Origin: Mytilus trossulus
Taxonomy: Eukaryota
Reading direction: 5' to 3'
DNA: 64,000 bases
Assembly: GCF_036588685.1 (NCBI RefSeq)
Contig: NC_086385.1
Coordinates: forward strand, 36,417,216-36,481,215
The translations under genes were made by a program, and so were the position numbers. The notes beneath the pieces were generated by a model, which was given only the letters and a program-made list of their open reading frames with translations, was not told where the DNA came from and did no database searches. This document shows, in pieces, positions 2,329 to 64,000 of this stretch (positions are counted from its first letter, which is position 1; every line of letters starts with the position of its first letter).

Positions 2329-4769
2329 TGATGTTGGTTCTAATTTCACGGATAACAAAATTGATATTACTAAGTACTACCAATAAAACAATATTCAAAG
2401 ATCTTATTACAGTGTTGCATTGGTAACCTTTTAGAATATATCAAAGGTATATGAAAAAATTGTGATCTAAACGTTAATCTTGCAAATAGGTTTATCAAAA
2501 AAGCGTTATTTTTTTTATATTGTTTAAATGTCAAAGTGTATTAAGAGGTACATGAATATGATTAAATGACTCTCCTTTTCTCCTTGTTTTTTTTTAATTA
2601 TACAGACATCTACGTCTTTAATAACTGTGCGGTTTCGAATGTATATATGTCTATAGCATGATGTATAAAACACATACACATGTATATATTAAATGAACGC
2701 ATTTGTTATCCGAACAATTTCACGAACGGCATACTCACACTAGGTCCTGTGTATCACACAAGTAATCGTAATTATTTTCGTTTTAAAAATATGCTAATGA
2801 TTGATCATTCTGTACTGAGATTTAATTTGTTAACCAAACTATTACCAAAATAATATATATGTTCTTTTTTAAACGCCATCAAACTGTGTGTACTATTTTC
2901 TTTACATGCATAGTTATGTGTAATATTCTTTTCCTGGTTGGTACATGTTTCGATAATATGACGTGTTGCTCAAATACAAATCAAGCACCGATATTGACCA
3001 TTATTAAGTTAGGACCCATTATTGATACGTCTGTTCTTACCTGCTTGTATCTTTGTTGGACTTTGAGATGTTGTGTACCTTCAAGGTTTAAGCTACACTA
3101 TCTACAATTATTGATTTTACCTATTGTGGTTACAGATGTACATGTGTATAAACAATCAATACGAAGTAGGTCATATAGTTTTTGAAAAATGTTTTAGATA
3201 TTTGTTGTCCCCCTTTTTCACGTTCATTAATACAATTTTCACTATTATTTGTAGGTGAATTCTCAGACATTCTTTTATAAATAATTAATTTGTTTGCATC
3301 TGTTATGAGATCAAATGAAAAGGAACGTTACAATATATCAATATTTTCAAATGGGAAAACATGCAATTTATTTAAACAAATCAAATTTATCTATTTCCTG
3401 CCATGGCTTACTTTTTGAGTTGACATGTTTGCCGATACAATAATGACATGGGTGTATGTAACCTGGAATCCTGATGTGTCTAATACTTTCGATTTTGCTA
3501 TGCTTCAATTCAAATATAAGTCCGCTTACGGTATTAAGAATATTGTGTCAGGTTCCCAGACTAGGTTGTATGTAAATATGGCCATAGTTTGTAGTTCCTT
3601 CTTAAAACCTTCAACTGATATATTACAAAACATCAAGTATCCCTATTTACACATCATCAACTTTCAAACGAAACATATAGAGAAAGAACTGAAAACTTCA
3701 CGCATCGTAAATAATTTTCACTATAACGAACAATATACAAGAAGGAAAAGTAAGCTAAATATACATTGCTATATATGTGCAGTTATATGAACGGATGGTC
3801 ATACATCCTGTCTATACTGTTTACATATATTTTGACATTGCATAAGGTCATGCAATTCTCAGACGAATAATACGTAGTTTTACTAAATTCTTCTAATGTC
3901 TACTTATTAATACCTTTGTCTTGGAGAAAATTGAATTTATAAGTCGTAAATGGTTTTGAACGAATTTTCCGTAACTGTATGTTTGTGTCTATAGCTTCTT
4001 ATGTTAGTTGTTTTTGTACTAAGGCTTCATGATGATCTTTTAGGTTGAGCCAATTGCAACTGATTTTCACAACTTGCTTATATATTGTGCTGTTACATCA
4101 CTGTCCTAGGTTAGAAGAGGTGTGAGTGCTCACAGACACTTTAAACCCGGCAATAATCTAATTGTGCCAGATCCAAGTCAGGAGCTAGTATTTCAGTTAT
4201 TTCTATAGTTTATGTATGTCATGTTTGTTGTTTTTTTAAATTATTCTGTTATAGGTAAGGGCCGTTACTTTAAATGAATGAAACGTTTTACATTTTTGCA
4301 TATTGGTGCGTTTTGTAATCGACTATACGATATGGAACTTTTTCTCATTCTCGAACGCCGTACAGTGAAATATATTTCTACTTATTTGAAATCTAATGGT
4401 AATTTTATCATTTGCGTGCATACCACATCTCTTTTATTTCGATGCGTAAACCGCGCAATGATTGTAAGCACGTGTACAAAATAAGTCTGAATTTCAAGTT
4501 AAATATAAAAAAAACCACGTGATAAATATACTTTTTACAATGTCACTGACCAATTTGAATGACATAAGAAACACGTGAAAGCTCAAACCAACAGATAATA
4601 CTGTATAATAAAGACGATCTACATTTTAAAATATGACGTGTTTTACTACAGAAGAAAACAGGTGTTTTAACTGTGCCCGTTTGGTTATCATCAGTGTATC
4701 AGACATAATGCGACGTTGAGGAGATGTTGCATATAAAATAAGATGTACTTAAAAACTGCAAAGATCATT

Positions 4770-5935
4770 TAGAGTACATACAATTTATGACTCTTTCATC
4801 TGGCAATAGTATTAAAACATCGGACTTTTCTACACTTTACACAAGTATTCCCCGTTCCAGACTAAAAGGCAAATTGAAAGAGTAGGCATTGCTTTGTTTC
4901 ATAAAAAAGAATGGCAAACGTAGATACAAGTATCTTTTCTTAGGGAAGGATGAGTCCTACTTTGTAAAGAATCACTCTAATTAAAACAATAAATTTTCTG
5001 AAACTGAGGTGATCAAGATACTTGATTTCTTAAATGACAACATATTTGTTACGAGGAGGACGTGTTTTTCAACAGACTGTCGGAATTCCATTGGTCTAAC
5101 CGACTTTTTTCTTTATCGTTATGAGGCTTACTTCATACAAGAACTTCTTAGGAAGAAAAAAAAAGAGAAATTAGCAATATCCTCTAATTTTACGATCCGC
5201 TATATAGGTGATGTTCTCTCACTAAATTATTCAAAATTTGGTGACAATGTTGAACGAATCCATCACTTTGAACTAGAGATAAGGGATACTACATATACAG
5301 TTAATCCTGTCTCATATCTGGATTTATATCTAGAATTTGACAACGAGGGTAGGTTGAAAACAAAACTGATGATTTCAGCTTTCCAATTGTGAACTTTCCA
5401 TTTCTAGGTAGCAACATTCAAGAAGCGCCTGTGTACGATTTTCCCGGGAGTGTATTTATTATCATGCTTTCCTTGATAAGGGGTTGTTTTGCTGCTCACT
5501 AGGAAGCTAATAAACTAGAGTTCCAAATGGTGAAGTTGAAATCATCTTTTCGTAAATTTTACGGACGCCATTACGAGTTGGCTGACCGTTATTGGATAAC
5601 AGTTTCACAGATGATATCGTATATGTTCTTTATCTCGTAACTACAATCCCCTTCCCTTTTCACGAATATGACCTACAGAATAAGACTTTTTACCGGATTT
5701 GTAATAACATAAGAACCACGACTGAGGCCACATGTGGAGCAGGATCGGCATACCCTTCCGGAGCACTTGAGATCACCCCAGTTTTTTATGGAGTTCGTGT
5801 TGCTTAGTCTTTAGTTTTCTTTGTTGTGTCTTGTGTACTGATATTTGTCTGTTTGTCTTTTTCTTTTTTTAGAAATGGCGTTGTCAGTCGATTTATGAAT
5901 TTGACTGTCCTTTTTGTATCTTTCGTCCCTCCTTT
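4770..5935 (+). mobile_element. Decayed Penelope-like retroelement RT fragment
   Basis: Frameshifted RT motifs: IKTSDFSTLYTSIP, IRYIGDVLSLN (degenerate YIDD), SYLDLYLEFDNEGRLKTKL, IVNFPFL.SNI. Duplicate at ~59160-60320. Confidence 0.75.
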
Positions 5936-6344
5936 ATTGATGCATTGAAATTGTATGAATAGCTCTAAGATCTAACACGCTTATTTCCCAAATTTGATGT
6001 TAGTGTAAACTTGATAAAAGACTCTCACTCCTTCATGGATGAATCGAAAATGTATAAATAGATCTCAGATCTAAACGTCTAAGACGTTTTCCCCCCAAAA
6101 TTATGTAAGTGTAAACTTGACAACATACTCTCACAAACTTTAGGTTTATTGAAATCTATCGAATGTTATTGTTAGTCGTGAATGCTGATGCAATCGAATG
6201 CCGTTCTTCTGTATTAAATTGATTACAAAATTGTAAACGATTCTTTTTTAGGCTAACTCAGTACAAACCATACAGTCATATAATTGTATTGGTCGATATT
6301 TTCCGCATTCGATATCTTTTGGCTGAAAATAGAGATTAACTCAT

Positions 6345-6530
6345 TATAGATACCAAGATTAATATTTACATTTACGCCAGACGTGCGTTTCGTTTATAAA
6401 AGACGCATCAGTGACGCTCGAATCCAAAAAAAGTTAAAAAGGCCAAATAGAGTTGATGAGCATTGATGACCAAAATTCCTAAAAGTTTTGCCCAATACAA
6501 CTAAGGTGATCTATTCCTGAGGTAGAAAAA
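6345..6530 (-). ncRNA. Degenerate retrozyme/hammerhead fragment
   Basis: Minus strand gagcgtca-CTGATGC-gtcttttataaac-GAAA-cgcacgtc-tggcgt (core A9 mutated); homologous to 26045-26576. Duplicate at ~60730-60910. Confidence 0.7.
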
Positions 6531-7734
6531 TCAGAAAATATTGATGAATGTTCTTTTCAGTAGTAATCCGAACTTTTCTGATTAGGTTCCAGTAATATAT
6601 TCCCAAGAACCAGAAATTAAGGAAACAACAGCCATGGATTCCTCCCTTTTAAGACTATACGTCGAATTCGACACACAAATGCATCTCAGTACCATAATCT
6701 ATGACAAATGAGACGATTCTTATTTTCCCTCACCTTATAGTAAAAGGAGTATACCAGTTTTCACCTGCATATGAGATATACATTTCCCAACTTATTCGGT
6801 ATTCAATAGCATGCAGTAACTACTCAGACTTTGTAAAAGTCACCAGTGTTTGAGCAAAAAGATAATGAGACAGTGGTATGTCAAAAAAGGGTACCGAAAC
6901 CTTGTTGACAAATATTTTGAATCAACTTTACAAATATACACGATAGTCTTGAAGCATAAACTCTGGGAACTAACGTTGTTTATCTTCTTAGTTACGTGTT
7001 ATATCATTTTTCATTAAATGTTTTTTTTGTGATATCCATTAAACGTTACTCTGTACTTATGTATCCCGTTATTGTTTCTATGATATTTTTTATAATATTG
7101 TCTTTTATTTTTGCTTATGTACTTTGTATATATGCCTTTTTGTGTTTCTTTGATACATATGACGTGGCTCTGAACTCATACATCAAACCATTGTGTTATT
7201 GTTTAATGCATGTTTTTTGTATTCTTGTTTATCATTTTTGCCAATGTGCTTTGTCTATATTCCTTATTGTGCTTTCTGTGATTAAGATTATAATACAATG
7301 TTGACTGCTGTATCCGTATTTTTGACATTTTTACCTTTTGTATCTGTTTGATTTGTTCACATATTGTTGTCAATATATTGGAATTCGACGCAACTGCCAT
7401 ACAAGTAAGAGGTTTAACAAGCTATATAACCTGGTTTAATCCACCATTTTCTACATAAGAAAATGCCTGTGCTAAGTCAGGAATATGACAGTTGTTATCC
7501 ATTCGTTGGATATGTTTAGGCGTAAGATTTTGCTATTTGATTAGGGACTTTCCGTTTTGAATTTTCCTCGAAGTTCAGTATTTTTTGTGATTTTCTTTTT
7601 TCTTACACAATTTATATAATTTCTATTATTGTATAATTAATGAAAATAAAGTCCAATAGACAACAGATATGTCTTAATACAGCCGTATCAGTTGTTTGTG
7701 CATTTGTAATTAAAAATTATACATATGGCAATTT

Positions 7735-9474
7735 TCAATCAGCAGAATGTTTACTGCATTTAACGTCAAACAGAAAGGCAACTTCATGATAGTTAGCAAC
7801 AAGAAGTACGTTTTTGGTTTTATGGAAATATACGGCACGAGGATTAAAAATTCCATCACTAGCTCCAATGAGCTGTTTGGCCTGTTTTCCATCTTTAGAT
7901 ATCACTACAACATTATTTGATTCAGACCCAGCAACATATATGTTGGAATATGAATCTAAAGTTATGCCGTATGGTTTTCTAAGCAATGAATCAGAATATG
8001 TCCATTGTACCTGTCCATTGTAATTGTAACATACGACGGAATTAGTACGCCAGTTGGAATGAAAAATGTTCTTTTCATTTGAGGTAACGTACGTCTCATC
8101 TACGTCCATAGGGGCAGAAGGTAATATACGGATGTTATTTTGTTTTTGAGACGTGTCATATAGTTTAATTCCATTTTGATGTGTGCAACAAATAAGCAAT
8201 CCATTGTGACAGCTTAAGCCATAACACCAGTCGCTGAGGTCATTCACTTTGAGCAATTTTGCATTATTCATATCAATAAAGTGAATGTTTGTTGGATGAT
8301 TTCCGCCACTTGATACGGCCACCGTTTGTGAATCAACCACTGCCAGGTCGTAACCAATAGCGGTTTGCTCATTTATAATACATGATTCGGAATTTAATTC
8401 ACCATTAGGACAATATGTAAGCAGATTATTATTGTGAGCTTGTAGAAATAACATGTTTCAAGCTTCTGATATGGCACATCCTGTTAGATAATTACGACCA
8501 ATGTTAATCTTTTGTACTAGCTTGACGTGTATTTCTTCAATCGATGTCGGTCCTGAAGTAGATTTATAAATTTGCGCTGATTGGTCACTTTTCCATGAAT
8601 ATGAAACATGCTTTTCAGAAGAATCCATCTTCATATCTCCAAGTGTATTTATTTCTTTGATAATCGCTTCTAGCTTTTCATTGAACGTAAATTGTAATGA
8701 TAAGTTGTTTAAACTCCCATTATCATACAATTTCTGGACGTTAATTTCATTGATGGAAACACTTTCTATGAATGCCTTTATTCCCATGAAGATTTGCAGA
8801 TTTGATGCAAACAGTTTTACAGATTCAACGTCTTTTTGAACTTCGTCTACTTTCTTTTTTTCTTCATTGAGTTTTGCAATCACTTCTTCTATTTTCTGAC
8901 TGTTATTTTTTTCCATTCTAGATGCTTTTTCTAGAACTTCCTCTTCTAAATGGTCTAAAAGCATAAGTATTTGTTGGCGTTTTTCTTTTATATTTTTTAC
9001 AATCACTTGCTTCTGTTCACGTAACTCTGTCAAGTTTCGCCTTCTGTCCTTTATAGCAGTAGAAATGTTACTTTCCAGATCTTTCAGAACTTTTTCAATG
9101 TTATCCAAAGGTACTGATTGGTGTCCTTTTGAAGGCGTAAGAAAATGTTCAACGAAAATAATGTCCGTGCATTCCTTATGAGCTGATATCGAACAAAGTT
9201 TACAGCAAAGAGAGTCATGAGATTTGCAATAAAATTCAAGGAAGCAGTCATGCTCCTCACAGTTTTGTTTTATTTTCTTGATAAATGATGGTAATTTTTG
9301 ATATTTTTCAATAGAGATTGTCTGATGCGATTTGAGTAATTTCGATGCCTTATGATGGTCTCTACAGTCTCGACACAGAGCCTCTTCACATTGTGGACAA
9401 TATTCTTCTGCTGACGTATTAAGGTGTCTGTTTTGGCAAACATTGCAGAGTAGTACTCTTTCGTTGGTGGCCAT
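7735..9474 (-). pseudogene. TRIM-like gene, copy B; single nonsense codon GGA>TGA at 8458-8460
   Basis: ORFs 8458..9735 and 7735..8454 share a frame and are separated only by TGA-AAC. Duplicate copy E reads EAGNMLF there. Likely start MATNER at 9474 (579 codons). NHL-like blades: LRKPYGITLDSYSNIYVAGSESNNVVVI, IFNPRAVYF. Confidence 0.9.
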
Positions 9475-13197: not shown

Positions 13198-13866
13198 TGT
13201 AGGACACATACATTTTGGAGCAATAGTTAAAATATCTGTTGTTTTGTTACTTTATCAATAAATACAATTTATTACATTCATTAATTGAGGAGATTTTTCG
13301 GAAATTTTTCTTTATTTGCTTTATTTTGATACCTTCTGTGTGCGGACACAATAAAAAGATATATATGAAATTTGTTATCTTTTATGCTTTTTTCTAATTC
13401 TATTTATACAATCCCCTACATTCGACTTATCAGAAATTTTTCTTTAGTCAGTTTACTAGAACTCATTTGTGAGAACACAGAAAATAATCTGAAAAATATT
13501 AAACTTACTATAGATTCCCCTTTTCTATCTGTTGACAATTCGTGATTTAGGAATCCCAATCAGTGATTTCTGATTAAAAATATAAAAAAGGGGCGAAAAA
13601 TACTAGAGGGACACTTAAACACATAGATCGAAATTAAACTGACAACGTCATAGCTAAAAAAGAAAGACAAACAGACAAATAATATATTATTAACTTTATT
13701 TCCTTCTTATCAAAGATTTTGCATGCATTAAAGGAAAAGGCCATGTTTATATTTTTTTGTAATTATCTGTTACAAATTAGTTTCAGTTGTTATAAAAAAA
13801 TAAAATAATTAACTATTTAGCAGTTTTAATTGTTATAGAGGGGTTTTTAATTTTTACATATTTGAA

Positions 13867-13930
13867 TTTCCCGCCTTCACTGGGGGCGGCCATGACCGGT
13901 GAACATCTGACGTCACATAGTCGGTTTGTT
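13867..13930 (+). promoter_or_regulatory. Candidate promoter of the accessory gene: E2F-like TTTCCCGCC, GC box, CRE TGACGTCA
   Basis: TTTCCCGCC at 13867-13875, GGGGGCGG at 13882-13889 and TGACGTCA at 13908-13915, ~110 bp upstream of ATG 14023. Confidence 0.55.
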
Positions 13931-14022
13931 TACAAGACAAAAACACAGGTGTATTTATGTATTTATGGATAGAAAATTAACGTGTTTCCGATTTATATTT
14001 TTAATTGTGAAGCGATTGTGAA

Positions 14023-15329
14023 ATGGCAGAAGGCCGGGACAATCTTGGAATAATTCCTTATGATTACGAACCGGAGTTTACGCAAGAAGAACTGCAAAAT
14101 ATAAGAGAGACATCGCCGATCACAAATCTTGCAACTTTAGAAGATTGGTGCAGTTGCAATGCATGTGAAGAAATGCCTTCGCCGGAGGAATGTATTTGTT
14201 GTTGCTCCTCTGAATATGTGCAACCGAACATTGATGACTTGGAGTGCATAACTGAACACCCTCAGTTTCAGCTGATCGTCCTTAATTCAGACGTTTTGAC
14301 AGTGGCATTTATTCAGATATTTATGTTTCAAGGAAATGCAGGTCGTGTCCCGGATAATTTAACAAATCAGTAAGTCAATTTTACATCGAATATTAAGCTT
14401 ACTAAATTTCGTAAATTGCTTAAAATTCTCGCTATCTTTATCTAACATTCATTGACATTCTCAACAACAACAAAAATGAAAAAAAGGGGGGTGCACATCT
14501 GCCTCCTCTCACCTGATAAAATGTTTTTATTATTAGTATTGACACTCTTATATATAGTCTAGCATGGAAGTAAAATCAAAGATATGAAACTTTGAAATAA
14601 CTAAACTAATTTATATATATATGTGAAAAAAAAATATGTTTCCATTTATATGTTTTAAAATGCCACATTATTTAAGTGTCCGTACCAAGTCAGGAGCCTC
14701 TCTAGAAGTTGACGTTTGTTTGTGTGTTACATATTTGTTATTGTTTATTTTTTTATATAAATAAGGACGTTCGTTTTCTCGATTGAATTGTTTTACATTA
14801 TCATATCGTGGCCATTTATAGCTGACCGGCTATGCAGTATGGACTTTGCTCATTGTTGAAGGCCGTACAATAATCTACATGTATAGTTGTTAATGTCTGT
14901 CATTTTGGTCTCTTGTGGACAGTTGTCTCATTTGCCATCATACCACATCTTCTTTTTTATATTATGTGTACAAAATGTAACTGTAATGAATAACAAGATA
15001 TTGTAAAATAAAGAACTTTGAACTCTACATGTATATATGTTAAAACCCATAATTACCACAACTAATTAAACTGATTTGACTGTTGTATTTATTAAAATAT
15101 GATAAAAAGCAAAATATTAATTATAATTGTCTTACTTTTCAGGCAGTCAAGGTTGACAGCCTACAGGCAGTTTGTATATTGGATGCTGAGAAGAGAAAAA
15201 CTTGGAAAAGGAAAGAGAGTTGTTATCCCATCGTGTGTGGTGAAATGCATTCGTGAAGCATTTCCAGAGTCAAATGGACATTACACAGGTTTTAGAACAG
15301 TATTTGACAATAGTTCACATTTGTTCTAA
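14023..15329 (+). CDS. KolX-like / P2X7 C-terminal (ballast) domain protein; exons 14023..14369 and 15143..15329; 177 aa; intact
   Basis: Donor CA|GTAAGT at 14370, acceptor TTTTCAG| at 15142, phase-2 join in frame. Motifs PYDYEP, WCSCNACEEMP..EECICCC, CITEHPQF, RLTAYRQF, GKGKRVVIPSCVVKCIREAFP...YTGF. Confidence 0.85.
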
Positions 15330-15436
15330 TATATATAATTATGTTTATTATGTACAGTGCTACTGTATTGATTTTTTAATTTCATTTAAAAAATATTTGC
15401 TCTAATTTGACTCATTTATTTATTTGTGATTCACAT

Positions 15437-18400
15437 TCAATCACAAACTTTGTTAAATCTTGAAATAAGATTATGAACTAGTTCAGCCTTTTCCGGTGCT
15501 GGTACAGGTGCAATATTGCCCTGATTTTTTGTGTCAATTTTGGGAAAGATCATCTCTGCCTTTTGCAAAACACACATTTTCATCATTGTGTTTACCCACT
15601 TATATGTCTTAGTGTTATACACTGGTTTAGCTACCCATTTTGCTGTTATCTTTGAGTACACAGTTTTGTACACTTCATTTCCTTGTGCGTCAATTTTTTT
15701 TCCACGGTTTTGTGACATATTGTGGTCAATTACTGCTAGCGATGTTCTAGCATTCATCTGGTCAAAGTCAAATTCTTGTCGCTTTGGAACATATTTTAAA
15801 AGCAAGCTATGGTACACCTCCAAATTTCCAGTGTGGCAGAACTCGCTTAAATGTTTAATGTCTTTCCTTAACCGTTTATTAAGGATAACTTCTTTCAAAG
15901 CATTGTGTGCTTTCGAATCCTTCACAAGCCACCTTTTTTTTTCAGCTATAGCTGGTGTTATCTCTTCGTGTGCACAGGATGTGACTGCCTTGCCCTCGAA
16001 TGTGTGCAGGTTTATCACATGATGAACGATTGAAACCCAGCTTTCCTCTAACCATTCCTTATCCCCGTTGCAATTGCTTGCACACCACCATAGGTGATTG
16101 CAAATAGCCTTAATCCATGGTGCAAGGTCTTCAGCTCCCCTCAGTTTGGCTTTTTGTTGGAGTTTTTTGCGTACACTTTTTGCCAAATGCCATACATCAA
16201 ACTGGTGTTCAGTCTCAGGATATTGTTTGTTCATCACACTTCTTATCTGGACATGTCGATCAGTTGCAAGAACAGTAATTTGAAAACCTTTGTCTAAAAG
16301 GTACTCCATACATCGACGGAAACCCTCTACCTCCATCTTAGAGGAACTCCCAGTTTCAGTAACTTTGATAGTGACAAAAGCCAATATGTGTTGTGTTTCA
16401 ATGTCAAGTAATGAATATGTGCAGTATTTGGCATTGAAACCAGGTGAATCACACCTACCATCTCCTGCAAGCCTTAGTGGTCTATTTGAAGCTTTCACTT
16501 TGTCTAATAATTTTCCCTGTATAACCGTCCATGTGTGTGCAATAACTGGCATAATAATTTCTCGTTGTATGGTGTAGTAGGTTGAACTTCCAATAAATTT
16601 TAAATTCATGAACTCAGCAAATTGGGCTATGTGTGTGTAGGTTTGACCACATAACATTGTAGCAGCAGTGACTAGTAAGTTGCCAGCTGGCATGTTGCCT
16701 ATGAGAGGTTGGGATAACCACTTATAGACAAGATGCCCACTGGTACAGAACACAGAAACTCTGATGATGGTACCAGATGAACAATCTTTTTTAGTGTCTG
16801 ACAAATCTACTGGACAGTTGCACTCATCACATTTAAGCCTAGCAAAGAGTTGATCCAGTTTGGTTTCAAAAACAATAAATTTTCTTTGATTAGTAATGCA
16901 AGCTTGAGTATCAGAGGCTGCAGTACTATCATCTGAATCTATGCTCTCATTTCCTTCATTTTCATCAGAATTTTGGATATCACGGTCGATGTCAAAGGTC
17001 AAGTCATTCTTATCATCACTGAAAGAATGACTTGCAATTGAGCTGTTGAAAATATCATTCTCTTTTATTGGAGTTGAGATTGAGGACGGAGGTATCTTAG
17101 GTATTGGAGTTAATGGCCAAATAGCTAAAGTCTTGTCTGTTGTTTCCATGGTTATATCAGTGTTTACTCCTATTGTACAAGTTGATGGTCCAATTCGCTT
17201 GGTGTAGCTGTGATCTGCTGTTAGAATTGATGACTCGATTTTATTTGCTTGCAAACACATCATACATGGATGACCACATGCGTTTCCTGAATATGTGACT
17301 GATAAAATGGAAGACGAATTTGGTGGTTCCTGACTGTGCAATTCTACCATGTCTTCTGTTTCAGGGACTTCAATTTGTCCACTGCATTCTACTGTTTCAA
17401 GAACTTCAATTTGTCCACTGCATTCTCCATGGGGCTCAGAAAAAATGCTCTATAACAAAAAATGCTTGAAATAGTATTTATAATACACAATAGAACCTTT
17501 TCCTTGTTTGTCTTTATGACTTATAATATTTAATTAGAATTGTTTCAAAATTGAAACATATTTATTAAAGTTCCCCAAGCTGGATTTTTTTTTATAACAT
17601 ATTTAGATATTCAAATTAATAAGATTTGCCTACAAAATATTTGTAAAATTAATTGGTTGTTTGTTGTTTGCTCAACACCCAGTGGCAAATATTTCATGCA
17701 TGTTCAGGAGGGTAATAAATAGAGGCCGTCGGGGATGAAGGTCGAGGAAATCAAATCTTTGTACAAAACAATGTACTTTTGCATACCTGATCCTGTAAAG
17801 GTAAAGTCTCTGATATGACTGGAGGTGTAGAACATGTTGCCGCTTTTGGGTTTTCAATAGACAGTATAGTCTCTTTCTCGACCTGAAAAAAAATAATGAA
17901 ATAAAATAAATACACGATGTTTATTGGATATATGTTGTATTTCACCGACCAACCTATCCCCCTCGTGTCCCCTATTTTCTCTATTTGTACTAGTTTTGCA
18001 TACCTGATTCTGTAAGGTCAAAGTCTCTGAACTGACTGATGGTGTAGAACATGTTGCCGCTTTTCTTTTCTTTTTAAACAGCTTAATCTCTTCTTTGACC
18101 TGCAAAAAATAATCAAATAAAATAAATAGACGATATTTATTGAAATTTAGCTTTTATGCCGACCCCAAACACCCCCTTTTTTCTCCCGATATTTTTTCCA
18201 AATTTTCACTTGGATAATAGCAGTTTTTAAAATATCTCTTGTTCTCTTCTCTTGTGTAACTGCACATTCTATTTTATTTAAATAACTAGATAAACGAATA
18301 TTTTGCATTCCAGTAGCACAGACTAAAACTGGATTTTAGAACCTAATCAATATAAAAGTCAAATAAGACAACACATACGAGACCAGGTTTCAGGACTTTA

Positions 18401-19043
18401 TTTTTGTTTATTAGTAATTGATATAAGTAGCAATGCATTTATAATAATTGTTTATTATTCCCTGATCTCCGCGATGCATGTTATATTGAGAACTCACCAT
18501 GATACCATGATATATATTGTTTACAAACACGCGCATACAATGACCTCAAACGACCTGATAATATGATACTATTACTACACACACATCATTACTGCACACG
18601 TGGAAATAGTTTAATTTTGCGTATTACGATAAATCGAAGTAAAAGTAATTCTTTTTTTTAATATTCTATTTACTAACCTGTGCACTTCGACGTTTTTGTG
18701 TAGATTTGGTCGATCGTTCCTGTGTTTTTCTGGTGTCCATTCCGGTGTTGACAATTGTCGGCACTGCATTTTGACGCAAATATTTTCTTTTTGGTAAGAA
18801 GTCCAAAGATTCTTTGACCAGGTTTCTCTCGAATGAATCGGGCGTGAAATGGTCTTAACAAACAACCTTGCTACTGCTAAATTTAAAATTTTCTATTTGC
18901 AGTTTACCATTTTTCAAGTTCGAGATCCATTGTTTACAAAGTTTCTTTTTATCTGCACTTTTTGAAGGATCAGGCATAACGAAAAAACTTTTTGTACACT
19001 TCCCTTTTTCATTAGTACAATTGAATGCTTGACAAGACGGCAT
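15437..19043 (-). pseudogene. THAP-DDE Kolobok transposase; exons 19043..18678, 18099..18004, 17882..17787, 17449..15437; ~856 codons; TAA at codon 63
   Basis: THAP: MPSCQAFNC...W...VVC*DHF...NAVPTI in one frame through TAA at 18855-18857. All three introns are GT-AG, phase 0. Catalytic motifs: LAGDGRCDSPG.NAKYCTYS, LATDRH, HQFDVWH, HTGNLEVYHS..LKYVPKR. Confidence 0.85.
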
Positions 19044-19126
19044 CTTTATTGAAATATTAAGCGAATTGTGTTTAATTATAGCGAAGTAAAAAAATATTTT
19101 ATTATGTTCATCCGCACTGCTTCAGT

Positions 19127-19149
19127 ACCAAACAGACTGTGTGACGTCA
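19127..19149 (-). promoter_or_regulatory. CRE-containing motif upstream of the transposase
   Basis: Minus strand TGACGTCACACAGTCTGTTTGGT matches 13908-13930 (TGACGTCACATAGTCGGTTTGTT) at 20/23 positions. Confidence 0.6.
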
Positions 19150-19644
19150 TTAGACATTCGGGGCTTATCGGTTTGAAACAATAAACAGCGAGGATGATTG
19201 GCACCGAATCTGTCTTTTATTAGAAGAGTACTTACAATGGCGTTTACCATGATATTGTGAAAATGTCAAATTTAATAAACCGTATTTCATTATTAGAAGA
19301 GTTAATTTAAAAATCGTTGGGTTATTTACGTTTGGGAAAACACTTTTTATCATATAAACTCAGCTTCAGTAAAACCTGGAGTTTTCCTTTAAAGAATTTT
19401 TGTACAATGATAATAATTACATATTGATCAAGACATTAGAGTGATTGAATTATTTAAATGTCACATATTAATTAGAGTGATTGAATCAGTTGAATATCAC
19501 TTGAAAGTAAATTATAATATTTCTGAAGGTAAGTTAACTGTTATAAAACACGCTGCACATTCGTTAAATGTGAAATACAAGTTTTTGAGAAATAAATACT
19601 GTTACCATTATCCAGATCATATTACGTATAACATGCCAAAAACT

Positions 19645-56850: not shown

Positions 56851-59800
56851 CCTAATATTTGGAATAGTTATTCAACATTTTTAAGTCTTTAATTAAACTA
56901 TGTGTATCGAAATTGTGGAAACACAAGTTAACATTTCTACGACGACAGCAACGTATTATTATTCGTGTCAGTATTGTTTAAACGTCAAAGTGTAATAGCA
57001 GGCACATGGATAGGAGTAAATGACCATCCTTTACCCGTTTGTTTATTATACAGACATCTACGTCTTAAATAACGGTGCGGTTTCAAATGTATATATGTTT
57101 ACAGCATGTAAAACACATATAAACGTAAATATCTAATGTACGCATATGTTATCCGAACAATTTCACAAACGGCATACTCTTATTATTATTAGGTCCTGTG
57201 TATCACCCAAGTAATCGTTATATTTTACGTTTTAAAAACCTTCTAATGATTCTGTACTGAGGTTAAATTTGATATCCAAAATATTACCAAAATAATATAA
57301 ATATATTTTTAAACGCCATCAAATTGTGTGTATTATTTTCTTTATATGCATAGTTATGAGTGGGATTTTTTTCCTGGTTGGTATTGGTTTCGATAATCTG
57401 ACGTGTTGCTCAAAGGCAAATCAAGCACAGATATTGACCATTATTAAGTTAATTAGGACCCATTATTGATATTACTTTTCCTACCTGCTTGTAACTTTGT
57501 CGGACTTTGAGCTGTTGTGTACCTTCATAGATTTAAGCTACACTATCTACGATTATTGATTTTACCTGTTGTGGTTGCATATGCACATGTGTATAAACAA
57601 CAAATACAAAGTAGGTCATATAGATTTTTGAAAAATGTTTTAGATATTTGGTGTCCCCCTTTTTCTTGTCCATTAATACAATGTTCTCTATTGTCTGTAG
57701 GTTATCATACATTCTTTTATATATAATTAATTTGTTCGCATCTGCGATGAGATTAAGTGAAAAGGAACCTCACAATATATCAATGTTTTTAAATGGGAAA
57801 ATGGATAACGTTCTAGATGCACATGTTCGACGATACAATAATGACATGGGTGTATGTAACCTGGAATCCTGATGTGTCTAATATTTTCGATTTTGCTATG
57901 CTTCAATTCAAATATAAGTCCGCTTACGGTATTAAGAATATTGTGTCAGGTTCCCAGACTAGGGTGTATGTAAATATGGCCATAGTTTGTAGTTCCTTCT
58001 AAAAACCTTCAACAGATATATTACAAAACATCAAGTATCCCTATTTACACATCATCAACTTTCAAACAAAACATATAGAGAAAGAACTGAAAACTTCACG
58101 CATCGTAAATAATTTTCACTATAACGAACAATATACAAGAAGGAAAAGTAAGCTAAATATACATTGCTATATATGTGCAGTTATATGAACGGATGGTCAT
58201 ACATCCTGTCTATACTGTTTACATATATTTTGACATTACATAAGGTCATGCAATTCTCAGACGAATAATACTTAGTTTTACTAAATTCTTCTAATGTCTA
58301 CTTATTAATACCTTTGTCTTGGAGAAAATTGAATTTATAAGTCGTAAATGGTTTTGAACGAACTTTCCGTAACTGTATGTTTGTGTCTATAGCTTCTTAT
58401 GTTAGTTGTTTTTGTACTAAGTCTTCATGATGATCTTTTAGGTTGAGCCAATTGCAACTGATTTTCACAACTTGCTTATATATTGTGCTGTTACATCACT
58501 GTCCTAGGTTAGAAGAGGTGTGAGTGCTCACAGACACTTTAAACCCGGCAATACTCTAAATGTGCCAGATCCAAGTCAGGAGCTAGTATTTCAGTTATTT
58601 CTATAGTTTATGTATGTCATGTTTGTTGTTTTTAAATTATTCTGTTATAGGTAAGGGCCGTTACTTTAAATGATTGAAACGTTTTACATTTTTGCATATT
58701 GGTGCGTTTTGTAATCGACTATACGATATTGAACCTTTTCTCATTCTCGAACGCCGTACAGTGAAATATATTTCTACTTATTTGAAATCTAATGGTAATT
58801 TTATCATTTGCGTGCATACCACATCTCTTTTATTTCGATGCGTAAACCGCGCAATGATTGTAAGCACGTGTACAAAATAAGTCTGAATTTCAAGTTAAAT
58901 ATAAAAAAAACCACGTGATAAATATACTTTTTACAATGTCACTGACCAATTTGAATGAGATAAGAAACACGTGAAAGCTCAAACCAACAGATAATACTGG
59001 ATAATAAAGACGATCTACATTTTAAAATATGACGTGTTTTACTACAAAAGAACACAGGTGTTTTAACTGTGCCCGTTTGGTTATCATCAGTGTATCAGAC
59101 ATAATGCGACGTTGAGGACATGTTGCATATAAAATAAGATGTACTTAAAAACTGCAAAGATCATTTAGAGTACATACAATTTATGACTCTTTCATCTGGC
59201 AATAGTATTAAAACATCGGACTTTTCTACACTTTACACAAGTATTCCCCGTTCCAGACTAAAAGGCAAATTGAAAGAGTAGGCATTGCTTTGTTTCATAA
59301 AAAAGAATGGCAAACGTAGATACAAGTATCTTTTCTTAGGGAAGGATGAGTCCTACTTTGTAAAGAATCACTCTAAATAAAACAATAAATTTTCTGAAAC
59401 TGAGGTGATCAAGATGCTTGATTTCTTAAATGACAACATATTTGTTACGAGGAGGACGTGTTTTTCAACAGACTGTCGGAATTCCATTGGGCACCAATTG
59501 TGCCCTCTTCTTACAGACTTTTTTCTTTATCCTTATGAGACTTACTTCATACAAGAACTTCCTCTAATTTTACGATCCGCTATATAGGTGATGTTCTCTC
59601 ACTAAATTATTCAAAATTTGGTGACTATGTTGAACGAATCCATCACTTTGACCTAGAGATAAGGGATACTACATATACAGTTAATCCTGTCTCATATCTG
59701 GATTTATATCTAGAATTTGACAACGAGGGTATGTTGAAAACAAAACTGATGATTTCAGCTTTCCAATTGTGAACTTTCCATTTCTATGTAGCATCATTCA

Positions 59801-61728
59801 AGAAGCGCCTGTGTACGATTTTCCCGGGAGTGTATTTATTATCATGCTTTCCTTGATAAGGGGTTGTCTTGCTGCTCACTAGGAAGCTAATAAACTAAAG
59901 TTCCAAATGGTGAAGTTGAAATCATCTTTTCGTAAATTTTACGGACGCCATTACGAGTTGGCTGACCGTTATTGGATAACAGTTTCACAGATGATATTGT
60001 ATATGTTCTTTATCTCGTAACTACAATCCCCTCCCCTTTTCACGAATATGACCTACAGAATAAGACTTTTTATCGGATTTGTAATAACATAAGAACCACG
60101 ACTGAGGCCACATGTGGAGCAGGATCTGCATACCCTTCCGGAGCACTAGAGATCACCCGAGTTTTTCATGGAGTTCGTGTTGCTTAGTCTTTAGTTTTCT
60201 TTGTTGTGTCTTGTGTACTGATATTTGTCTGTCTGTCTTTTTCTTTTTTTTTAGAAATGGCGTTGTCAGTCGATTTATGAATTTGACTGTCTTTTTTGTA
60301 TCTTTCGCCCCTCCTTTATTGATGCATTGAAAATGTATGAATAGCTCTAAGATCTAACAGGCTTATTTCCCAAATTTGATGTTAGTGTAAACTTGATAAA
60401 AGAATCTCACTCCTTCATGGATAAATCGAAAATGTATAAATAGATCTCAGATCTAAACGTCTAAGACGTTTTCCCCCCAAAATTATGTAAGTGTAAACTT
60501 GACAACATACTCTCACAAACTTTAGGTTTATTGAAATCTATCGAATGTTATTGTTAGTCGTGAATCCTGATGCAATCGAATGCCGTTCTTCTGTATTAAA
60601 TTGATTACAAAATTGTAAACGATTCTTTTTTAGGTTAACTCAGTACAAACCATACAGTCATATAATTGTATTGGTCGATATTTTCCGCATTCGATATCTT
60701 TTGGCTGACAATAGAGATTAACTCATTATAGATACCAAGATTAATATTTACATTTACGCCAGACGTGCGTTTCGTTTATAAAAGACGCATCAGTGACGCT
60801 CGAATCCAAAAAAAGTTAAAAAGGCCAAATAGAGTTGATGAGCATTGATGACCAAAATTCCTAAAAGTTTTGCCCAATACAACTAAGGTGATCTATTCCT
60901 GAGGTAGAAAAATCAGAAAATATTGATGAATGTTCTTTTCAGTAGTAATCCGAACTTTTCTGATTAGGTTCCAGTAATATATTCCCAAGAACCAGAAATT
61001 AAGGAAACAACAGCCATGGATTCCTCCCTTTTAAGACTATACGTCGAATTCGACACACAAATGCATCTCAGTACCATAATCTATGACAAATGAGACGATT
61101 CTTATTTTCCCTCACCTTATAGTAAAAGGAGTATACCAGTTTTCACCTGCATATGAGATATACATTTCCCAACTTATTCGGTGTTCAATAGCATGCAGTT
61201 ACTACTCAGACTTTGTAAAAGTCACCAGTGTTTGAGCAAAAAGATAATGAGACAGTGGTATGTCAAAAAAGGGTACCGAAACCTTGTTGACAAATATTTT
61301 GAATCAACTTTACAAATATACACGATAGTCTTGAAGCATAAACTCTGGGAACTAACGTTGTTTATCTTCTTAGTTACGTGTTATATTATTTTTCATTAAA
61401 TGTTTTTTTTGTGATATCCATTAAACGTTACTCTGTACTTATGTATCCCGTTATTGTTTCTATGATATTTTTTATAATATTGTCTTTTATTTTTGCTTAT
61501 GTACTTTGTATATATGCCTTTTTGTGTTTCTTTGATACATATGACGTGGCTCTGAACTCATACATCAAACCATTGTATTATTGTTTAATGGCATGTTTTT
61601 TGTATTCTTGTTTATCATTTTTGCCAATATGCTTTGTCTATATTCCTTATTGTGCTTTCTGTGATTAAGATTATAATACAATGTTGACTGCTGTATCCGT
61701 ATTTTTGACATTTTTACCTTTTGTATCT

Positions 61729-62149
61729 AGATATAGGAAGATGTGGTGTGAGTGCCAATGAGACAACTCTCCATCCAAATAACAATTTAAAAATTAAACC
61801 ATTATAGGTTAAAGTACGGCCTTCAACACGGAGCCTTGGCTCACACCGCACAACAAGCTATAAAGGGCCCCAAAATTACTAGTGTAAAACCATTCAAACG
61901 GGAAAACCAACGGTCTAATCTATATAAACAAAACGAGAAACGAGAAACACGTATATATTACATAAACAAACGACAACTACTGTACATCAGATTCCTGACT
62001 TAGGACAGGTGCGAACATTTGCAGCGGGATTAAACGTTTTAATGGGCCCAAACCTTCTCCCTTTTTCTGAAACAATAGCATAACATCACAACATATAAAA
62101 ACATACGATAAAATATCAATTAGAAGACTTAACTCAATCAAAAAACGTA
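61729..62149. mobile_element. Recent ~421-bp retroposon-like insertion
   Basis: Absent from the duplicate at ~7341; flanked by TATCT at 61724-61728 and 62150-62154. Confidence 0.85.
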
Positions 62150-62542
62150 TATCTGTTTGATTTGTACACATATTGTTGTCAATATATTGGAATTCGACGC
62201 AACTGCCATACAAGTAAGAGGTTTAACAAGCTATATAACCTGGTTTAATCCACCATTTTCTACATAAGAAAATGCCTGTGCTAAGTCAGGAATATGACAG
62301 TTGTTATCCATTCGTTGGATATGTTTAGGCGTAAGATTTTGCTATTTGATTAGGGACTTTCCGTTTTGAATTTTCCTCGAAGTTCAGTATTTTTTGTGAT
62401 TTTCTTTTTTCTTACACAATTTATATAATTTCTTTTATTGTATAATTAATGAAAATAAAGTCCAATAGACAACAGATATTCTTAATACAGCCGCATCAGT
62501 TGTTTGTGCATTTGTAATTAAAAATTATACATATGGCAATTT

Positions 62543-64000
62543 TCAATCAGCAGAATGTTTACTGCATTTAACGTCAAACAGAAAGGCAACTTCATGATAG
62601 TTAGCAACAAGAAGTACGTTTTTGGTTTTATGGAAATATACGGCACGAGGATTAAAAATTCCATCACTAGCTCCAATGAGCTGTTTGGCCTGTTTTCCAT
62701 CTTTAGATATCACTACAACATTATTTGATTCAGACCCAGCAACATATATGTTGGAATATGAATCTAAAGTTATGCCGTATGGTTTTCTAAGCAATGAATC
62801 AGAATATGTCCATTGTACCTGTCCATTGTAATTGTAACATACGACGGAATTAGTACGCCAGTTGGAATGAAAAATGTTCTTTTCATTTGAGGTAACGTAC
62901 GTCTCATCTACGTCCATAGGGGCAGAAGGTAATATACGGATGTTATTTTGTTTTTGAGACGTGTCATATAGTTTAATTCCATTTTGATGTGTGCAACAAA
63001 TAAGCAATCCATTGTGACAGCTTAAGCCATAACACCAGTCGCTGAGGTCATTCACTTTGAGCAATTTTGCATTATTCATATCAATAAAGTGAATGTTTGT
63101 TGGATGATTTCCGCCACTTGATACGGCCACCGTTTGTGAATCAACCACTGCCAGGTCGTAACCAATAGCGGTTTGCTCATGTATAATACATGATTCGGAA
63201 TTTAATTCACCATTAGGACAATATGTAAGCAGATTATTATTGTGAGCTTGTAGAAATAACATGTTTCCAGCTTCTGATATGGCACATCCTGTTAGATAAT
63301 TACGACCAATGTTAATCTTTTGTACTAGCTTGACGTGTATTTCTTCAATCGATGTCGGTCCTGAAGTAGATTTATAAATTTGCGCTGATTGGTCACTTTT
63401 CCATGAATATGAAAAATGCTTTTCAGAAGAATCCATCTTCATACCTCCAAGTGTATTTATTTCTTTGATAATCGCTTCTAGCTTTTCATTGAACGTAAAT
63501 TGTAATGATACGTTGTTTAAACTCCCATTATCATACAATTTCTGGACGTTAATTTCATTGATGGAAACACTTTCTATGAATGCCTTTATTCCCATGAAGA
63601 TTTGCAGATTTGATGCAAACAGTTTTACAGATTCAACGTCTTTTTGAACTTCGTCTACTTTCTTTTTTTCTTCATTGAGTTTTGCAATCACTTCTTCTAT
63701 TTTCTGACTGTTATTTTTTTCCATTCTAGATGCTTTTTCTAGAACTTCCTCTTCTAAATGGTCTAAAAGCATAAGTATTTGTTGGCGTTTTTCTTTTATA
63801 TTTTTTACAATCACTTGCTTCTGTTCACGTAACTCTGTCAAGTTTCGCCTTCTGTCCTTTATAGCAGTAGAAATGTTACTTTCCAGATCTTTCAGAACTT
63901 TTTCAATGTTATCCAAAGGTACTGATTGGTGTCCTTTTGAAGGCGTAAGAAAATGTTCAACGAAAATAATGTCCGTGCATTCCTTATGAGCTGATATCGA
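62543..64000 (-). CDS. TRIM-like gene, copy E; open within the window; 5' end off the window
   Basis: Continuous coiled-coil plus NHL-like propeller ORF, near-identical to copy B but with GGA where B has TGA. Confidence 0.88.
   Translation of the reverse strand, partial: SISAHKECTDIIFVEHFLTPSKGHQSVPLDNIEKVLKDLESNISTAIKDRRRNLTELREQKQVIVKNIKEKRQQILMLLDHLEEEVLEKASRMEKNNSQKIEEVIAKLNEEKKKVDEVQKDVESVKLFASNLQIFMGIKAFIESVSINEINVQKLYDNGSLNNVSLQFTFNEKLEAIIKEINTLGGMKMDSSEKHFSYSWKSDQSAQIYKSTSGPTSIEEIHVKLVQKINIGRNYLTGCAISEAGNMLFLQAHNNNLLTYCPNGELNSESCIIHEQTAIGYDLAVVDSQTVAVSSGGNHPTNIHFIDMNNAKLLKVNDLSDWCYGLSCHNGLLICCTHQNGIKLYDTSQKQNNIRILPSAPMDVDETYVTSNEKNIFHSNWRTNSVVCYNYNGQVQWTYSDSLLRKPYGITLDSYSNIYVAGSESNNVVVISKDGKQAKQLIGASDGIFNPRAVYFHKTKNVLLVANYHEVAFLFDVKCSKHSAD

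What the first reader, a model, noticed from the sequence alone, without database searches (positions are those of the whole stretch)
13732..19388. Complete Kolobok transposon carrying a stand-alone P2X7-ballast-like protein
Seen: TTAA TSD, TIRs, a THAP-DDE transposase and an intact 177-aa spliced gene with WCxCxxC/CxCC/C cysteines and R..AYR.F, RVVIPSC, IR..FP...YTGF motifs. Established: the vertebrate P2X7 cytoplasmic ballast uses such motifs to bind two Zn ions and GDP/GTP, and Kolobok elements encode an accessory protein (KolX) of unknown function. Inference: a two-component transposon with a possibly guanine-nucleotide-binding cofactor, which would suggest a transposon origin for the ballast domain and for many invertebrate 'P2X7-like' annotations.
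Basis: partly seen in the sequence, partly recalled or inferred. Interest (0 to 1): 0.8.

Follow-up and report, generated by a model that had tools for sequence, protein, structure and literature searches.

The report
Mussel Kolobok transposon with KolX gene
This is one young copy of a two-gene "Kolobok" jumping gene in a mussel genome, and the link between its small second gene and the P2X7 receptor tail was already published in 2022.

Summary
Window 13732-19388 is a 5,657-bp DNA transposon. It is flanked by a duplicated TTAA, and a paralogous empty site carries a single TTAA.

It has two convergent genes. One is a spliced 177-aa gene; both of its exons match Pfam P2RX7_C, and its model matches only P2X7 ballast domains in the PDB (Z 12). 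The other is a four-exon THAP-DDE transposase of 856 codons. In this copy it is cut by one stop codon inside the THAP finger.

The genome is Mytilus trossulus, going by the name on P0001. It holds two more near-identical copies that differ by 0.2-0.6%. Spliced transcripts of both genes occur in four public runs. Across this genome, 24 of 61 ballast-like loci lie within 10 kb of a related transposase, always tail to tail, against about 0.05 expected by chance.

Kojima & Bao 2022 (PMC9587614) already state that KolX of the Kol0 Kolobok lineage has the ballast fold and gave rise to the P2X7 C-terminus. An earlier follow-up in this scan reached the same verdict on other DNA of this genome (s1-826749).

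Guanine-nucleotide binding remains untested; only 2 of 5 rat GDP-contact residues are kept. This is a new member of a known kind, of low interest.

The parts
13728..13731 (.). Left copy of the TTAA target-site duplication
   Evidence: The empty paralogous site has one TTAA.
13732..13748 (+). 5' terminal inverted repeat, starting AGGAAAAGG (5'-RR)
   Evidence: 14 of 17 bases match the other end. The same start is seen in L002 and L003; L007 starts GGGAAAAGG.
13866..13928 (+). Promoter-like subterminal block upstream of KolX (TTTCCCGCC ... GCCAT ... TGACGTCAC). 13908-13928 is one arm of a 21-nt subterminal inverted repeat.
   Evidence: I11, 21 nt, 90%; the TGACGTCA sits 175-177 nt from the 5' end in the window, L007, L005 and the 63%-identity family 2. 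Naming the sites as E2F- or CRE-like is from recall.
14023..14369 (+). KolX exon 1 (residues 1-115 plus two bases of codon 116). Holds the zinc-cysteine motifs.
   Evidence: P2RX7_C, E 7.2e-8, 33 bits. Donor GTAAGT. The joint is in 4 of 4 runs.
14370..15142 (+). KolX intron, holding a nested high-copy repeat at about 14646-14968
   Evidence: GT..AG skip of 773 bases; many 81-84% matches to element positions 910-1238, with 6,415 first-look candidates for the whole element query.
15143..15329 (+). KolX exon 2 (residues 116-177 and the stop codon)
   Evidence: P2RX7_C, E 6.5e-11, 42.9 bits; rat P2X7 546-599, E 1.6e-4.
15437..17449 (-). Transposase exon 4: zinc ribbon, DDE/RNase H core with DxxH and an insertion domain, and the C-terminus with the stop codon
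   Evidence: (PF20700, 35.5 bits)
17787..17880 (-). Transposase exon 3 (a duplicate of exon 2, about 81% identical)
18002..18097 (-). Transposase exon 2
18676..19043 (-). Transposase exon 1 with the THAP zinc finger. This copy has an in-frame stop at 18855-18857.
   Evidence: pieces score 23.5 and 16.5 bits, while the intact exon of L002 scores 54.8 bits; the stop is private to this copy.
19129..19149 (-). Second arm of the subterminal inverted repeat with TGACGTCA, 86 nt upstream of the transposase ATG
19372..19388 (-). 3' terminal inverted repeat, ending ...GTTTTCCT (YY-3')
19389..19392 (.). Right copy of the TTAA target-site duplication

Best explanation
Window 13732-19388 is one recently inserted copy of a cut-and-paste DNA transposon of the Kolobok superfamily, Kol0 (KolX-bearing) type, in Mytilus trossulus.

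Shown:
- It inserted into a TTAA and duplicated it.
- It carries two convergently transcribed, spliced genes whose 3' ends meet near 15365-15380.
- The 856-codon transposase has an N-terminal THAP zinc finger, a duplicated linker exon, a CxxC...CxxxH zinc ribbon, and an RNase H-fold DDE core with DxxH and a Cys/His-rich insertion domain.
- The 177-aa KolX keeps all seven zinc cysteines and folds like the P2X7 cytoplasmic ballast.
- This copy's transposase is cut by one stop codon inside the THAP finger. Two near-identical copies elsewhere read through at that position.

Inferred:
- The THAP finger binds subterminal sites and the DDE core cuts at the TTAA-flanked ends.
- This copy could move only if transposase came from other copies.
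- KolX is a zinc-stabilised accessory subunit of the transposition machinery, co-expressed through a shared subterminal promoter element. It acts by binding the transposase, DNA or a nucleotide through its conserved basic residues (R119, R124, K138, R141, R153).

The biochemical role of KolX is unknown in the literature I could search.
For: Ends and target-site duplication:
- TTAA on both sides in 4 of 4 two-ended copies, each with unrelated flanks.
- An empty paralogous site with one TTAA.
- Termini AG...CT.

Transposase:
- Pfam PF20700, 35.5 bits against a cut-off of 26.5.
- THAP scores 54.8 bits in the intact exon of copy L002.
- In the alignment of 39 sequences, D147, H216 and W237 are invariant; D214, D235, H238 and E361 are kept in 90% or more.
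- The model has pLDDT 91.8. Its best PDB matches are ISCth4, E 6e-6, then Hermes and the P element transposase.

KolX:
- Both exons score above the Pfam P2RX7_C cut-off.
- P0001 against rat P2X7 458-599, E 4.2e-9.
- The model has pLDDT 88.
- The 14 best Foldseek hits are all P2X7; the next hit has E 1.6.
- VIA Z 11.3-12.3, rmsd 2.7-3.2 over 115-117 residues; the next hit has Z 2.5.
- C43, C45, C75, R119, Y123 and P145 are invariant, and C48, C59, C60 and C147 are kept in 90% or more of 66 homologues.

Linkage:
- 24 of 61 P2RX7_C loci lie within 10 kb of a transposase hit, all 24 on opposite strands, against about 0.05 expected.
- 9 of 9 fetched linked loci are tail to tail, with transposase identity of 27-65%.
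- A second family of 8 copies has TTAA|AGGAGAAGGAAACC at both ends.

Expression:
- The KolX intron is removed in 4 of 4 runs. Transposase introns are removed in 2 to 3 of 4 runs.

Age:
- Copies differ by 0.2-0.6%.

Literature:
- PMC9587614 defines Kolobok, Kol0 and KolX in this way.
Against: - No tool here held reference Kolobok transposases (Repbase), so the superfamily call rests on defining features and not on a tree.
- The Pfam and fold matches alone would equally fit a Mutator/IS256-like enzyme.
- Nothing here shows that KolX is needed for transposition.
- Between this copy and the 89% copy L005, KolX dN/dS is about 0.8, from 2 synonymous and 6 non-synonymous changes per exon. Selection is therefore visible only at deep divergence.
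- 37 of 61 ballast-like loci have no transposase hit within 10 kb.
- The spliced RNA contigs carry G at 15178 and 15192 in 4 of 4 runs, and a sense codon at 18857 in the 3 runs with contigs across that position (X1, X2, X7). They therefore come from other copies or alleles, and expression of this copy is not shown.
- The runs are labelled 'RNA?' as a guess. Only the exact GT..AG joints argue that they are RNA.
- Exon 1 alone found no PDB sequence at E <= 1.
Confidence: 0.88

Rival explanations
1. KolX is a guanine-nucleotide-binding cofactor. It would give the Kolobok transposase, in trans, the kind of GTP dependence that the related THAP-bearing P element transposase gets from its own GTP-binding insertion domain.
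For: - The ballast of rat P2X7 binds GDP/GTP (passages of PMC7016195; abstract of PMC9574498).
- KolX keeps the equivalents of R546 (R119, 66 of 66 homologues) and R578 (R153, 63 of 66).
- P element transposase needs GTP to position the transposon end (passages of PMC7776569).
- Kolobok and P share the C/DxxH signature (PMC9587614, section 3).
Against: - Three of the five rat contacts differ: H547 is L120, R574 is V149 and K583 is E158.
- Rump et al. already reported this pattern for invertebrates.
- The ballast fold is unrelated to the P element GTP-binding domain.
- No binding data exist for any KolX. In one search, PMC9587614 headed the listing of 15 of 77 papers holding 'KolX'; the other 14 listed were materials-science papers.
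Confidence: 0.12
2. The 177-aa gene is a host 'P2X7-like' gene that merely sits beside or inside a transposase-only element, as the public name suggests.
For: - The public record names P0001 'P2X purinoceptor 7-like'.
- 37 of 61 ballast-like loci have no nearby transposase hit.
Against: - The gene lies inside the TTAA-bounded unit and is absent from the empty site.
- It travels with the element in the copy on C1. The C10 copy keeps only exon 2, because a deletion removed exon 1.
- The same tail-to-tail pair recurs in lineages whose transposases are only 27-65% identical.
- No P2X channel part is present: the only Pfam hit above its cut-off on the two exons is P2RX7_C.
Confidence: 0.03
3. The element belongs to piggyBac, which also uses TTAA; a few of its families encode a KolX-like C-terminal protein. 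Or it belongs to Mutator/MULE, because of the Pfam hit.
For: - TTAA duplication.
- PMC9587614 notes piggyBac families with a KolX-like protein.
- PF20700 'Mutator' at 35.5 bits, and a best fold match to the IS256-family ISCth4 transposase.
Against: - No piggyBac transposase family appears among the Pfam hits at E <= 1.
- The termini are AG...CT, which the paper gives as the mark that separates Kolobok from piggyBac.
- This KolX keeps all 7 cysteines, unlike the piggyBac-borne ones.
- A 4-bp TTAA duplication is not the long duplication of MULEs (recalled as 8-11 bp).
Confidence: 0.04

Closest known systems
Kol0 lineage of the Kolobok superfamily (type family Kolobok-1_XT), as described by Kojima & Bao 2022, Mobile DNA 13:24 (PMC9587614)
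   Same: - TTAA duplication and RR/YY termini.
- A DDE transposase with DxxH and a Cys/His cluster before the last E.
- A second gene, KolX, with the P2X7 ballast fold and seven conserved cysteines.
   Different: - The host is a mussel. The passage I read lists vertebrates, annelids, cnidarians and sponges for Kol0, and molluscs only for Kolobok in general.
- Here I also document the convergent gene order, the intron positions, the spliced transcripts and a shared subterminal promoter-like block. I did not see these in the sections read.
- The paper's supplements and Repbase could not be seen and may already hold mollusc Kol0 families.
Cytoplasmic ballast domain of vertebrate P2X7 (PDB 6u9v, 6u9w, 8tr5, 9e3m; Pfam PF20478)
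   Same: - The fold: Z 12, 116 aligned residues, 28-29% identity.
- The zinc-binding cysteines.
- The R..AY, IPSC and IR..FP...Y.GF motifs.
   Different: - KolX is a free-standing 177-aa protein with no channel, anchor or cap.
- 3 of 5 GDP contacts are replaced.
- It has its own conserved LGK..R loop and an N-terminal PYxFEP motif.
Drosophila P element transposase / THAP9
   Same: - An N-terminal THAP finger.
- An RNase H-fold DDE core with an insertion domain, and the C/DxxH signature.
- Foldseek matches to 6pe2 and 6p5a, E 0.01-0.02.
   Different: - TTAA duplication rather than 8 bp (recalled).
- No GTP-binding insertion domain was recognised.
- A separate accessory gene.
Zebrafish Nanor and the 'ZCD' ballast-like proteins of Rump et al. 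2020 (PMC7016195)
   Same: Small stand-alone ballast proteins with the same cysteine pattern, in which only the R546 and R578 equivalents are kept.
   Different: Those were described as host genes. This one sits inside a mobile element with intact ends.

Membership tests
Kolobok superfamily | 4-bp TTAA target-site duplication | tested here: met
   4 of 4 two-ended copies. An empty site has one TTAA. 8 of 8 family-2 elements have TTAA at both ends.
Kolobok superfamily | Termini 5'-RR and YY-3', which separates it from piggyBac | tested here: met
   AG...CT in the window, L002 and L003; GG...CT in L007. The criterion comes from PMC9587614, section 3.
Kolobok superfamily | [quoted passage not shown] | tested here: met
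   D147, D214, D235-V-W-H238 and E361 are conserved in 39 sequences. The model has an RNase H fold. The catalytic role is inferred.
Kolobok superfamily | Zinc finger between C/DxxH and the last E (absent only in the Kolobok1 lineage) | tested here: inconclusive
   Conserved H269, C277, H294, H299, C309 and H311 lie in that interval. I could not tell which four bind zinc.
Kolobok superfamily | Transposase groups with reference Kolobok families in a tree | not testable with these tools
   No Repbase here, and the supplements of PMC9587614 (Data S5) were closed.
Kol0 lineage | A second gene encoding KolX | tested here: met
   A 177-aa gene inside the element. The pair recurs in 24 loci.
P2X7 ballast domain (PF20478) | Profile match above the curated cut-off | tested here: met
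   Exon 1 scores 33 bits and exon 2 scores 42.9 bits, against a cut-off of 23.5.
P2X7 ballast domain (PF20478) | Seven zinc-coordinating cysteines | tested here: met
   C43, C45, C48, C59, C60, C75 and C147 are present, and invariant or kept in 90% or more of 66 homologues. Metal binding itself was not tested.
P2X7 ballast domain (PF20478) | Ballast fold | tested here: met
   Foldseek probability 1.0 for 14 P2X7 entries. VIA Z 11.3-12.3.
P2X7 ballast domain (PF20478) | GDP/GTP contact residues R546, H547, R574, R578, K583 (rat) | tested here: not met
   2 of 5 are kept: R119 and R153. L120, V149 and E158 differ (residue list from passages of PMC7016195).
P2X receptor | ATP-gated channel body with two transmembrane helices | tested here: not met
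   The product is 177 aa. The only Pfam hit above its cut-off is P2RX7_C. The public name 'P2X purinoceptor 7-like' is therefore misleading.
piggyBac | piggyBac-type transposase | tested here: not met
   No such Pfam family at E <= 1. The hits are PF20700, MULE and THAP.
Mutator/MULE | Long (8-11 bp) target-site duplication | tested here: not met
   The duplication is 4 bp, TTAA. The MULE figure is recalled.

The most novel reading that the evidence does not exclude
KolX is a nucleotide-sensing subunit supplied in trans. It would couple Kolobok transposition to the cell's guanine-nucleotide state, standing in for the GTP-binding insertion domain that P element transposases carry in cis. P2X7 would then have inherited a ready-made GDP/GTP sensor from a transposon cofactor. 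The conserved LGK..R loop and R119, R124 and R153 would form the binding site in place of the three lost rat contacts.
Probability: 0.1. Interest if true: 0.65.

Novelty: new member of a known kind. Interest (0 to 1): 0.2.

Why it matters
The copy matters little on its own. The key idea, that the P2X7 ballast descends from the KolX gene of Kolobok transposons, has been in print since 2022.

What this locus adds:
- A clean, young, expressed mollusc example with an empty site.
- Evidence that public 'P2X purinoceptor 7-like' names in bivalves label transposon genes.
- A genome-wide count of how often ballast-only genes sit tail to tail with a Kolobok transposase: 24 of 61 loci.

The open question is what KolX does. 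This family offers natural material to answer it, since its two genes are transcribed and its copies each carry a different lesion.

Tried and rejected
I replaced it with a linkage count inside the window's own genome.
- McCarthy et al. 2019 (PMC7053488) is not held. I took the GDP and zinc residue lists second-hand from Rump et al. 2020.
- Exon 1 alone finds nothing in PDB sequences.
- dN/dS between copies is uninformative: about 0.8 on 8 changes per exon.
- I looked for a third gene in the roughly 5 kb extra DNA of the 10-11 kb family 2. There was no ORF of 120 aa or more in the 5 kb read.
- I considered and rejected piggyBac, MULE and a host-gene reading (see rivals).
- I could not read model coordinates, so the clustering of the cysteines and basic residues was not checked.
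- Repbase and the supplements of PMC9587614 (Figure S6, Data S5 and S6) could not be seen. They may already list mussel Kol0 families, which would move this to 'already known'.

Papers, and what I saw of each:
- PMC9587614: outline and abstract; sections 3, 9 and 10 in full; passages covering sections 12 and 16.
- PMC7016195, PMC7776569, PMC12750733 and PMC10294476: passages only.
- PMC9574498: one abstract passage.
- PMC7053488: nothing.

The statement that no other paper treats KolX rests. In one search, 15 of 77 papers holding the word were listed, and 14 of those 15 were materials science.
Full report
What is there.

Window 13732-19388 (5,657 bp) begins AGGAAAAGGCCATG and ends CCTGGAGTTTTCCT. 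It is flanked by TTAA on both sides. The two ends match in 14 of their first 17 bases. The repeat finder lists the pair as I2, 26 nt at 81% with the TTAA included.

The genome is 1.30 Gb in 541 contigs. Going by the name on protein P0001, it is Mytilus trossulus. It holds:
- two more near-full copies: L002 on C1, and L003 on C10, which lacks element positions 185-734;
- an 845-bp internally deleted derivative, L007;
- three partial older copies at 87-89% identity.

All 4 of 4 copies with both ends are bounded by TTAA and sit in unrelated flanking DNA. The old fragment L005 reads TTCA and T at its junction, which I take as decay.

The two flanks of the window copy also occur 53.7 kb downstream, at 97% and 99% identity. 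There they abut over a single TTAA.

The window itself shows the same duplication: 3423-9192 matches 57821-64000 at 97.5-99.5%. The insertion is therefore younger than a roughly 54-kb tandem duplication, or it is heterozygous and the 'duplication' is an uncollapsed haplotype.

The three long copies differ by 0.2-0.6%.

The small gene.

Exon 1 (14023-14369, donor GTAAGT) and exon 2 (15143-15329, after TTTCAG) each match Pfam P2RX7_C above its cut-off: 33 and 42.9 bits against 23.5.

The database returned P0001, a 177-aa protein named 'P2X purinoceptor 7-like [Mytilus trossulus]'. It begins with the exon 1 translation, ends with the exon 2 translation, and has the split-codon Gln between them.

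- P0001 aligns to rat P2X7 residues 458-599, E 4.2e-9.
- Exon 2 alone reaches E 1.6e-4. Exon 1 alone finds nothing.
- A model built from 66 homologues has pLDDT 88 and pTM 0.78.
- In the PDB its 14 best Foldseek matches are all P2X7 receptors, E 2e-4 to 4e-3. The next hit has E 1.6.
- VIA-align gives Z 11.3-12.3, rmsd 2.7-3.2 Å over 115-117 residues and 28-29% identity, for model residues 37-170. The next hit has Z 2.5.

The family is large: 1,746 clusters at 50% identity with E <= 0.001. C43, C45, C75, R119, Y123 and P145 are invariant. C48, C59, C60, C147, R141, R153, P157, Y163 and G165 are kept in 90% or more of 66 homologues. That makes seven conserved cysteines, as published for KolX.

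Of the five rat GDP contacts, listed in passages of PMC7016195, only R546 and R578 have equivalents, R119 and R153. The other three positions are L120, V149 and E158.

The transposase.

It lies on the minus strand. RNA-derived contigs define four exons: 19043-18676, 18097-18002, 17880-17787 and 17449-15437. They total 2,571 nt, or 856 codons.

- Exon 1 is a THAP finger. The intact exon of copy L002 scores 54.8 bits over profile positions 1-86 of 87.
- In the window copy an in-frame stop at 18855-18857 splits exon 1 into pieces scoring 23.5 and 16.5 bits.
- The other two copies, and the contigs of the 3 runs that cross that position (X1, X2, X7), carry a sense codon there.
- Exons 2 and 3 are about 81% identical duplicates.
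- Exon 4 matches PF20700 (35.5 bits) and, weakly, MULE.
- Among 39 homologues from bivalves, sea urchins, a hemichordate and a lungfish, C24, C27, C52, D147, H216 and W237 are invariant. D214, D235, H238 and E361 are kept in 90% or more, and there is a Cys/His cluster between DxxH and E.
- The core model (pLDDT 91.8) is closest to the IS256-family ISCth4 transposase (E 6e-6), then Hermes and the P element transposase.

This is the MuDR/hAT/P/Kolobok group of RNase H-fold enzymes. No Kolobok structure appeared among the matches.

Other copies.

Each young copy carries a different lesion:
- the window copy has the THAP stop, plus two private KolX substitutions at variable positions (Y128, R133);
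- L002 has Cys45 replaced by Gly in KolX;
- L003 lacks KolX exon 1 and has a 36-bp in-frame deletion in the transposase.

Expression.

In contigs of four runs from four studies and two coded organisms, the KolX intron is removed exactly at GT..AG in 4 of 4 runs. Transposase introns are removed in 2 to 3 of 4 runs.

The tool labels these runs 'RNA?' as a guess; the exact joints are the argument that they are RNA.

All spliced KolX contigs carry G at 15178 and 15192, so they do not come from this copy's allele. The 3' ends of the two messages meet near 15365-15380.

Linkage.

In this genome PF20478 gives 76 matches in 61 loci, and the transposase core gives 80 matches in 55 loci.

- 24 of the 61 loci lie within 10 kb of a transposase locus, with gaps of 144-5,194 bp. 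All 24 are on opposite strands. Chance would give about 0.05.
- The tool states that these counts are lower bounds.
- 37 of the 61 loci stand alone.
- In 9 of 9 linked loci that I fetched, the pair is tail to tail, with transposase identity of 27-65% and KolX identity of 37-70% to the window's.
- A second family, 63-65% identical in the transposase, has 8 elements of about 10-10.9 kb, with TTAA|AGGAGAAGGAAACC at both ends.

What it is.

By the criteria in PMC9587614 (sections 3 and 10), this is a Kolobok element of the KolX-bearing Kol0 type:
- a TTAA duplication;
- RR/YY termini, in contrast to piggyBac;
- a DDE core with C/DxxH, and a zinc finger before the last E;
- KolX as the second protein.

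I could not place the transposase in a tree with reference families, because Repbase was not available and the supplements were closed.

What is new.

The central inference is not new. The same paper (passages of sections 12 and 16) states:
- that KolX has the cytoplasmic ballast fold with seven conserved cysteines;
- that the ballast-like proteins reported across animals by Rump et al. 2020 are parts of Kolobok transposons;
- that P2X7 arose by fusion of a P2X4-like gene with KolX.

Searches for P2X7 with ballast and transposon, for Kolobok with P2X7, and for KolX turned up this paper as the one treating the link.

This scan also reached the same verdict before, on other DNA of this genome (s1-826749). 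I read that note after forming my own reading.

What remains open is the function of KolX. My best guess is a zinc-stabilised accessory subunit of the transpososome. The guanine-nucleotide reading stays a minority possibility, given 2 of 5 contacts kept.

Noticed in passing
window 3423-9192 and 57821-64000; empty site at G000:C13:36484606-36484609: A roughly 54-kb tandem duplication at 97.5-99.5% identity, or an uncollapsed haplotype. One copy carries the Kolobok insertion and the other is empty.
   Followed up: partly
G000:C6:20680011-20690951; C7:9162100-9173049; C7:49941817-49951791; C9:63268576-63278610, 63278607-63288644, 63297999-63308033; C10:15739900-15750808; C14:41045156-41056104: A second KolX-bearing family with 8 elements of about 10-10.9 kb and identical 14-bp termini after TTAA. 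Two elements on C9 lie head to tail and share a single TTAA, which recalls the multimers described for KolobokP.
   Followed up: partly
window 13866-13928, and L021 about 5100-5210: A promoter-like block (TTTCCCGCC ... GCCAT ... TGACGTCAC) sits at the same distance from the 5' end in families 1 and 2 (TGACGTCA at nt 177), although the rest of their non-coding DNA does not align. A second TGACGTCA lies upstream of the transposase start. Naming the motifs as E2F- or CRE-like is from recall.
   Followed up: partly
window about 14646-14968 and 17512-17889: High-copy repeats are nested in the KolX intron and in a transposase intron. The whole-element query raised 6,415 first-look candidates, of which 40 were scored. 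Most of the scored matches fall on this intron repeat, and contig depth there is very high in all four runs.
   Followed up: no
window 17787-17880 and 18002-18097; 17367-17402: A duplicated linker exon, about 81% identical with its flanks. There is also a 12-residue tandem repeat (CSGQIEV...) whose copy number differs between copies: L003 has a 36-bp in-frame deletion.
   Followed up: no
L002 (G000:C1:6788555-6794214) and L003 (G000:C10:10627641-10632712): Each of the three young copies has a different lesion. The window copy has a stop in the THAP exon. L002 has a zinc cysteine of KolX replaced by glycine. L003 lacks KolX exon 1 and the upstream block.
   Followed up: yes
P0001 / window 14023-15329: The public annotation calls this transposon gene 'P2X purinoceptor 7-like', although no channel part exists. 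Such names in bivalve gene sets probably inflate counts of purinergic receptors.
   Followed up: partly
G000, 37 loci listed as 'alone' (e.g. C5:70979016-70979591, C1:12945331-12945888): Ballast-like reading frames, some open and intronless, with no transposase hit within 10 kb. They could be non-autonomous elements, decayed copies or domesticated genes.
   Followed up: no
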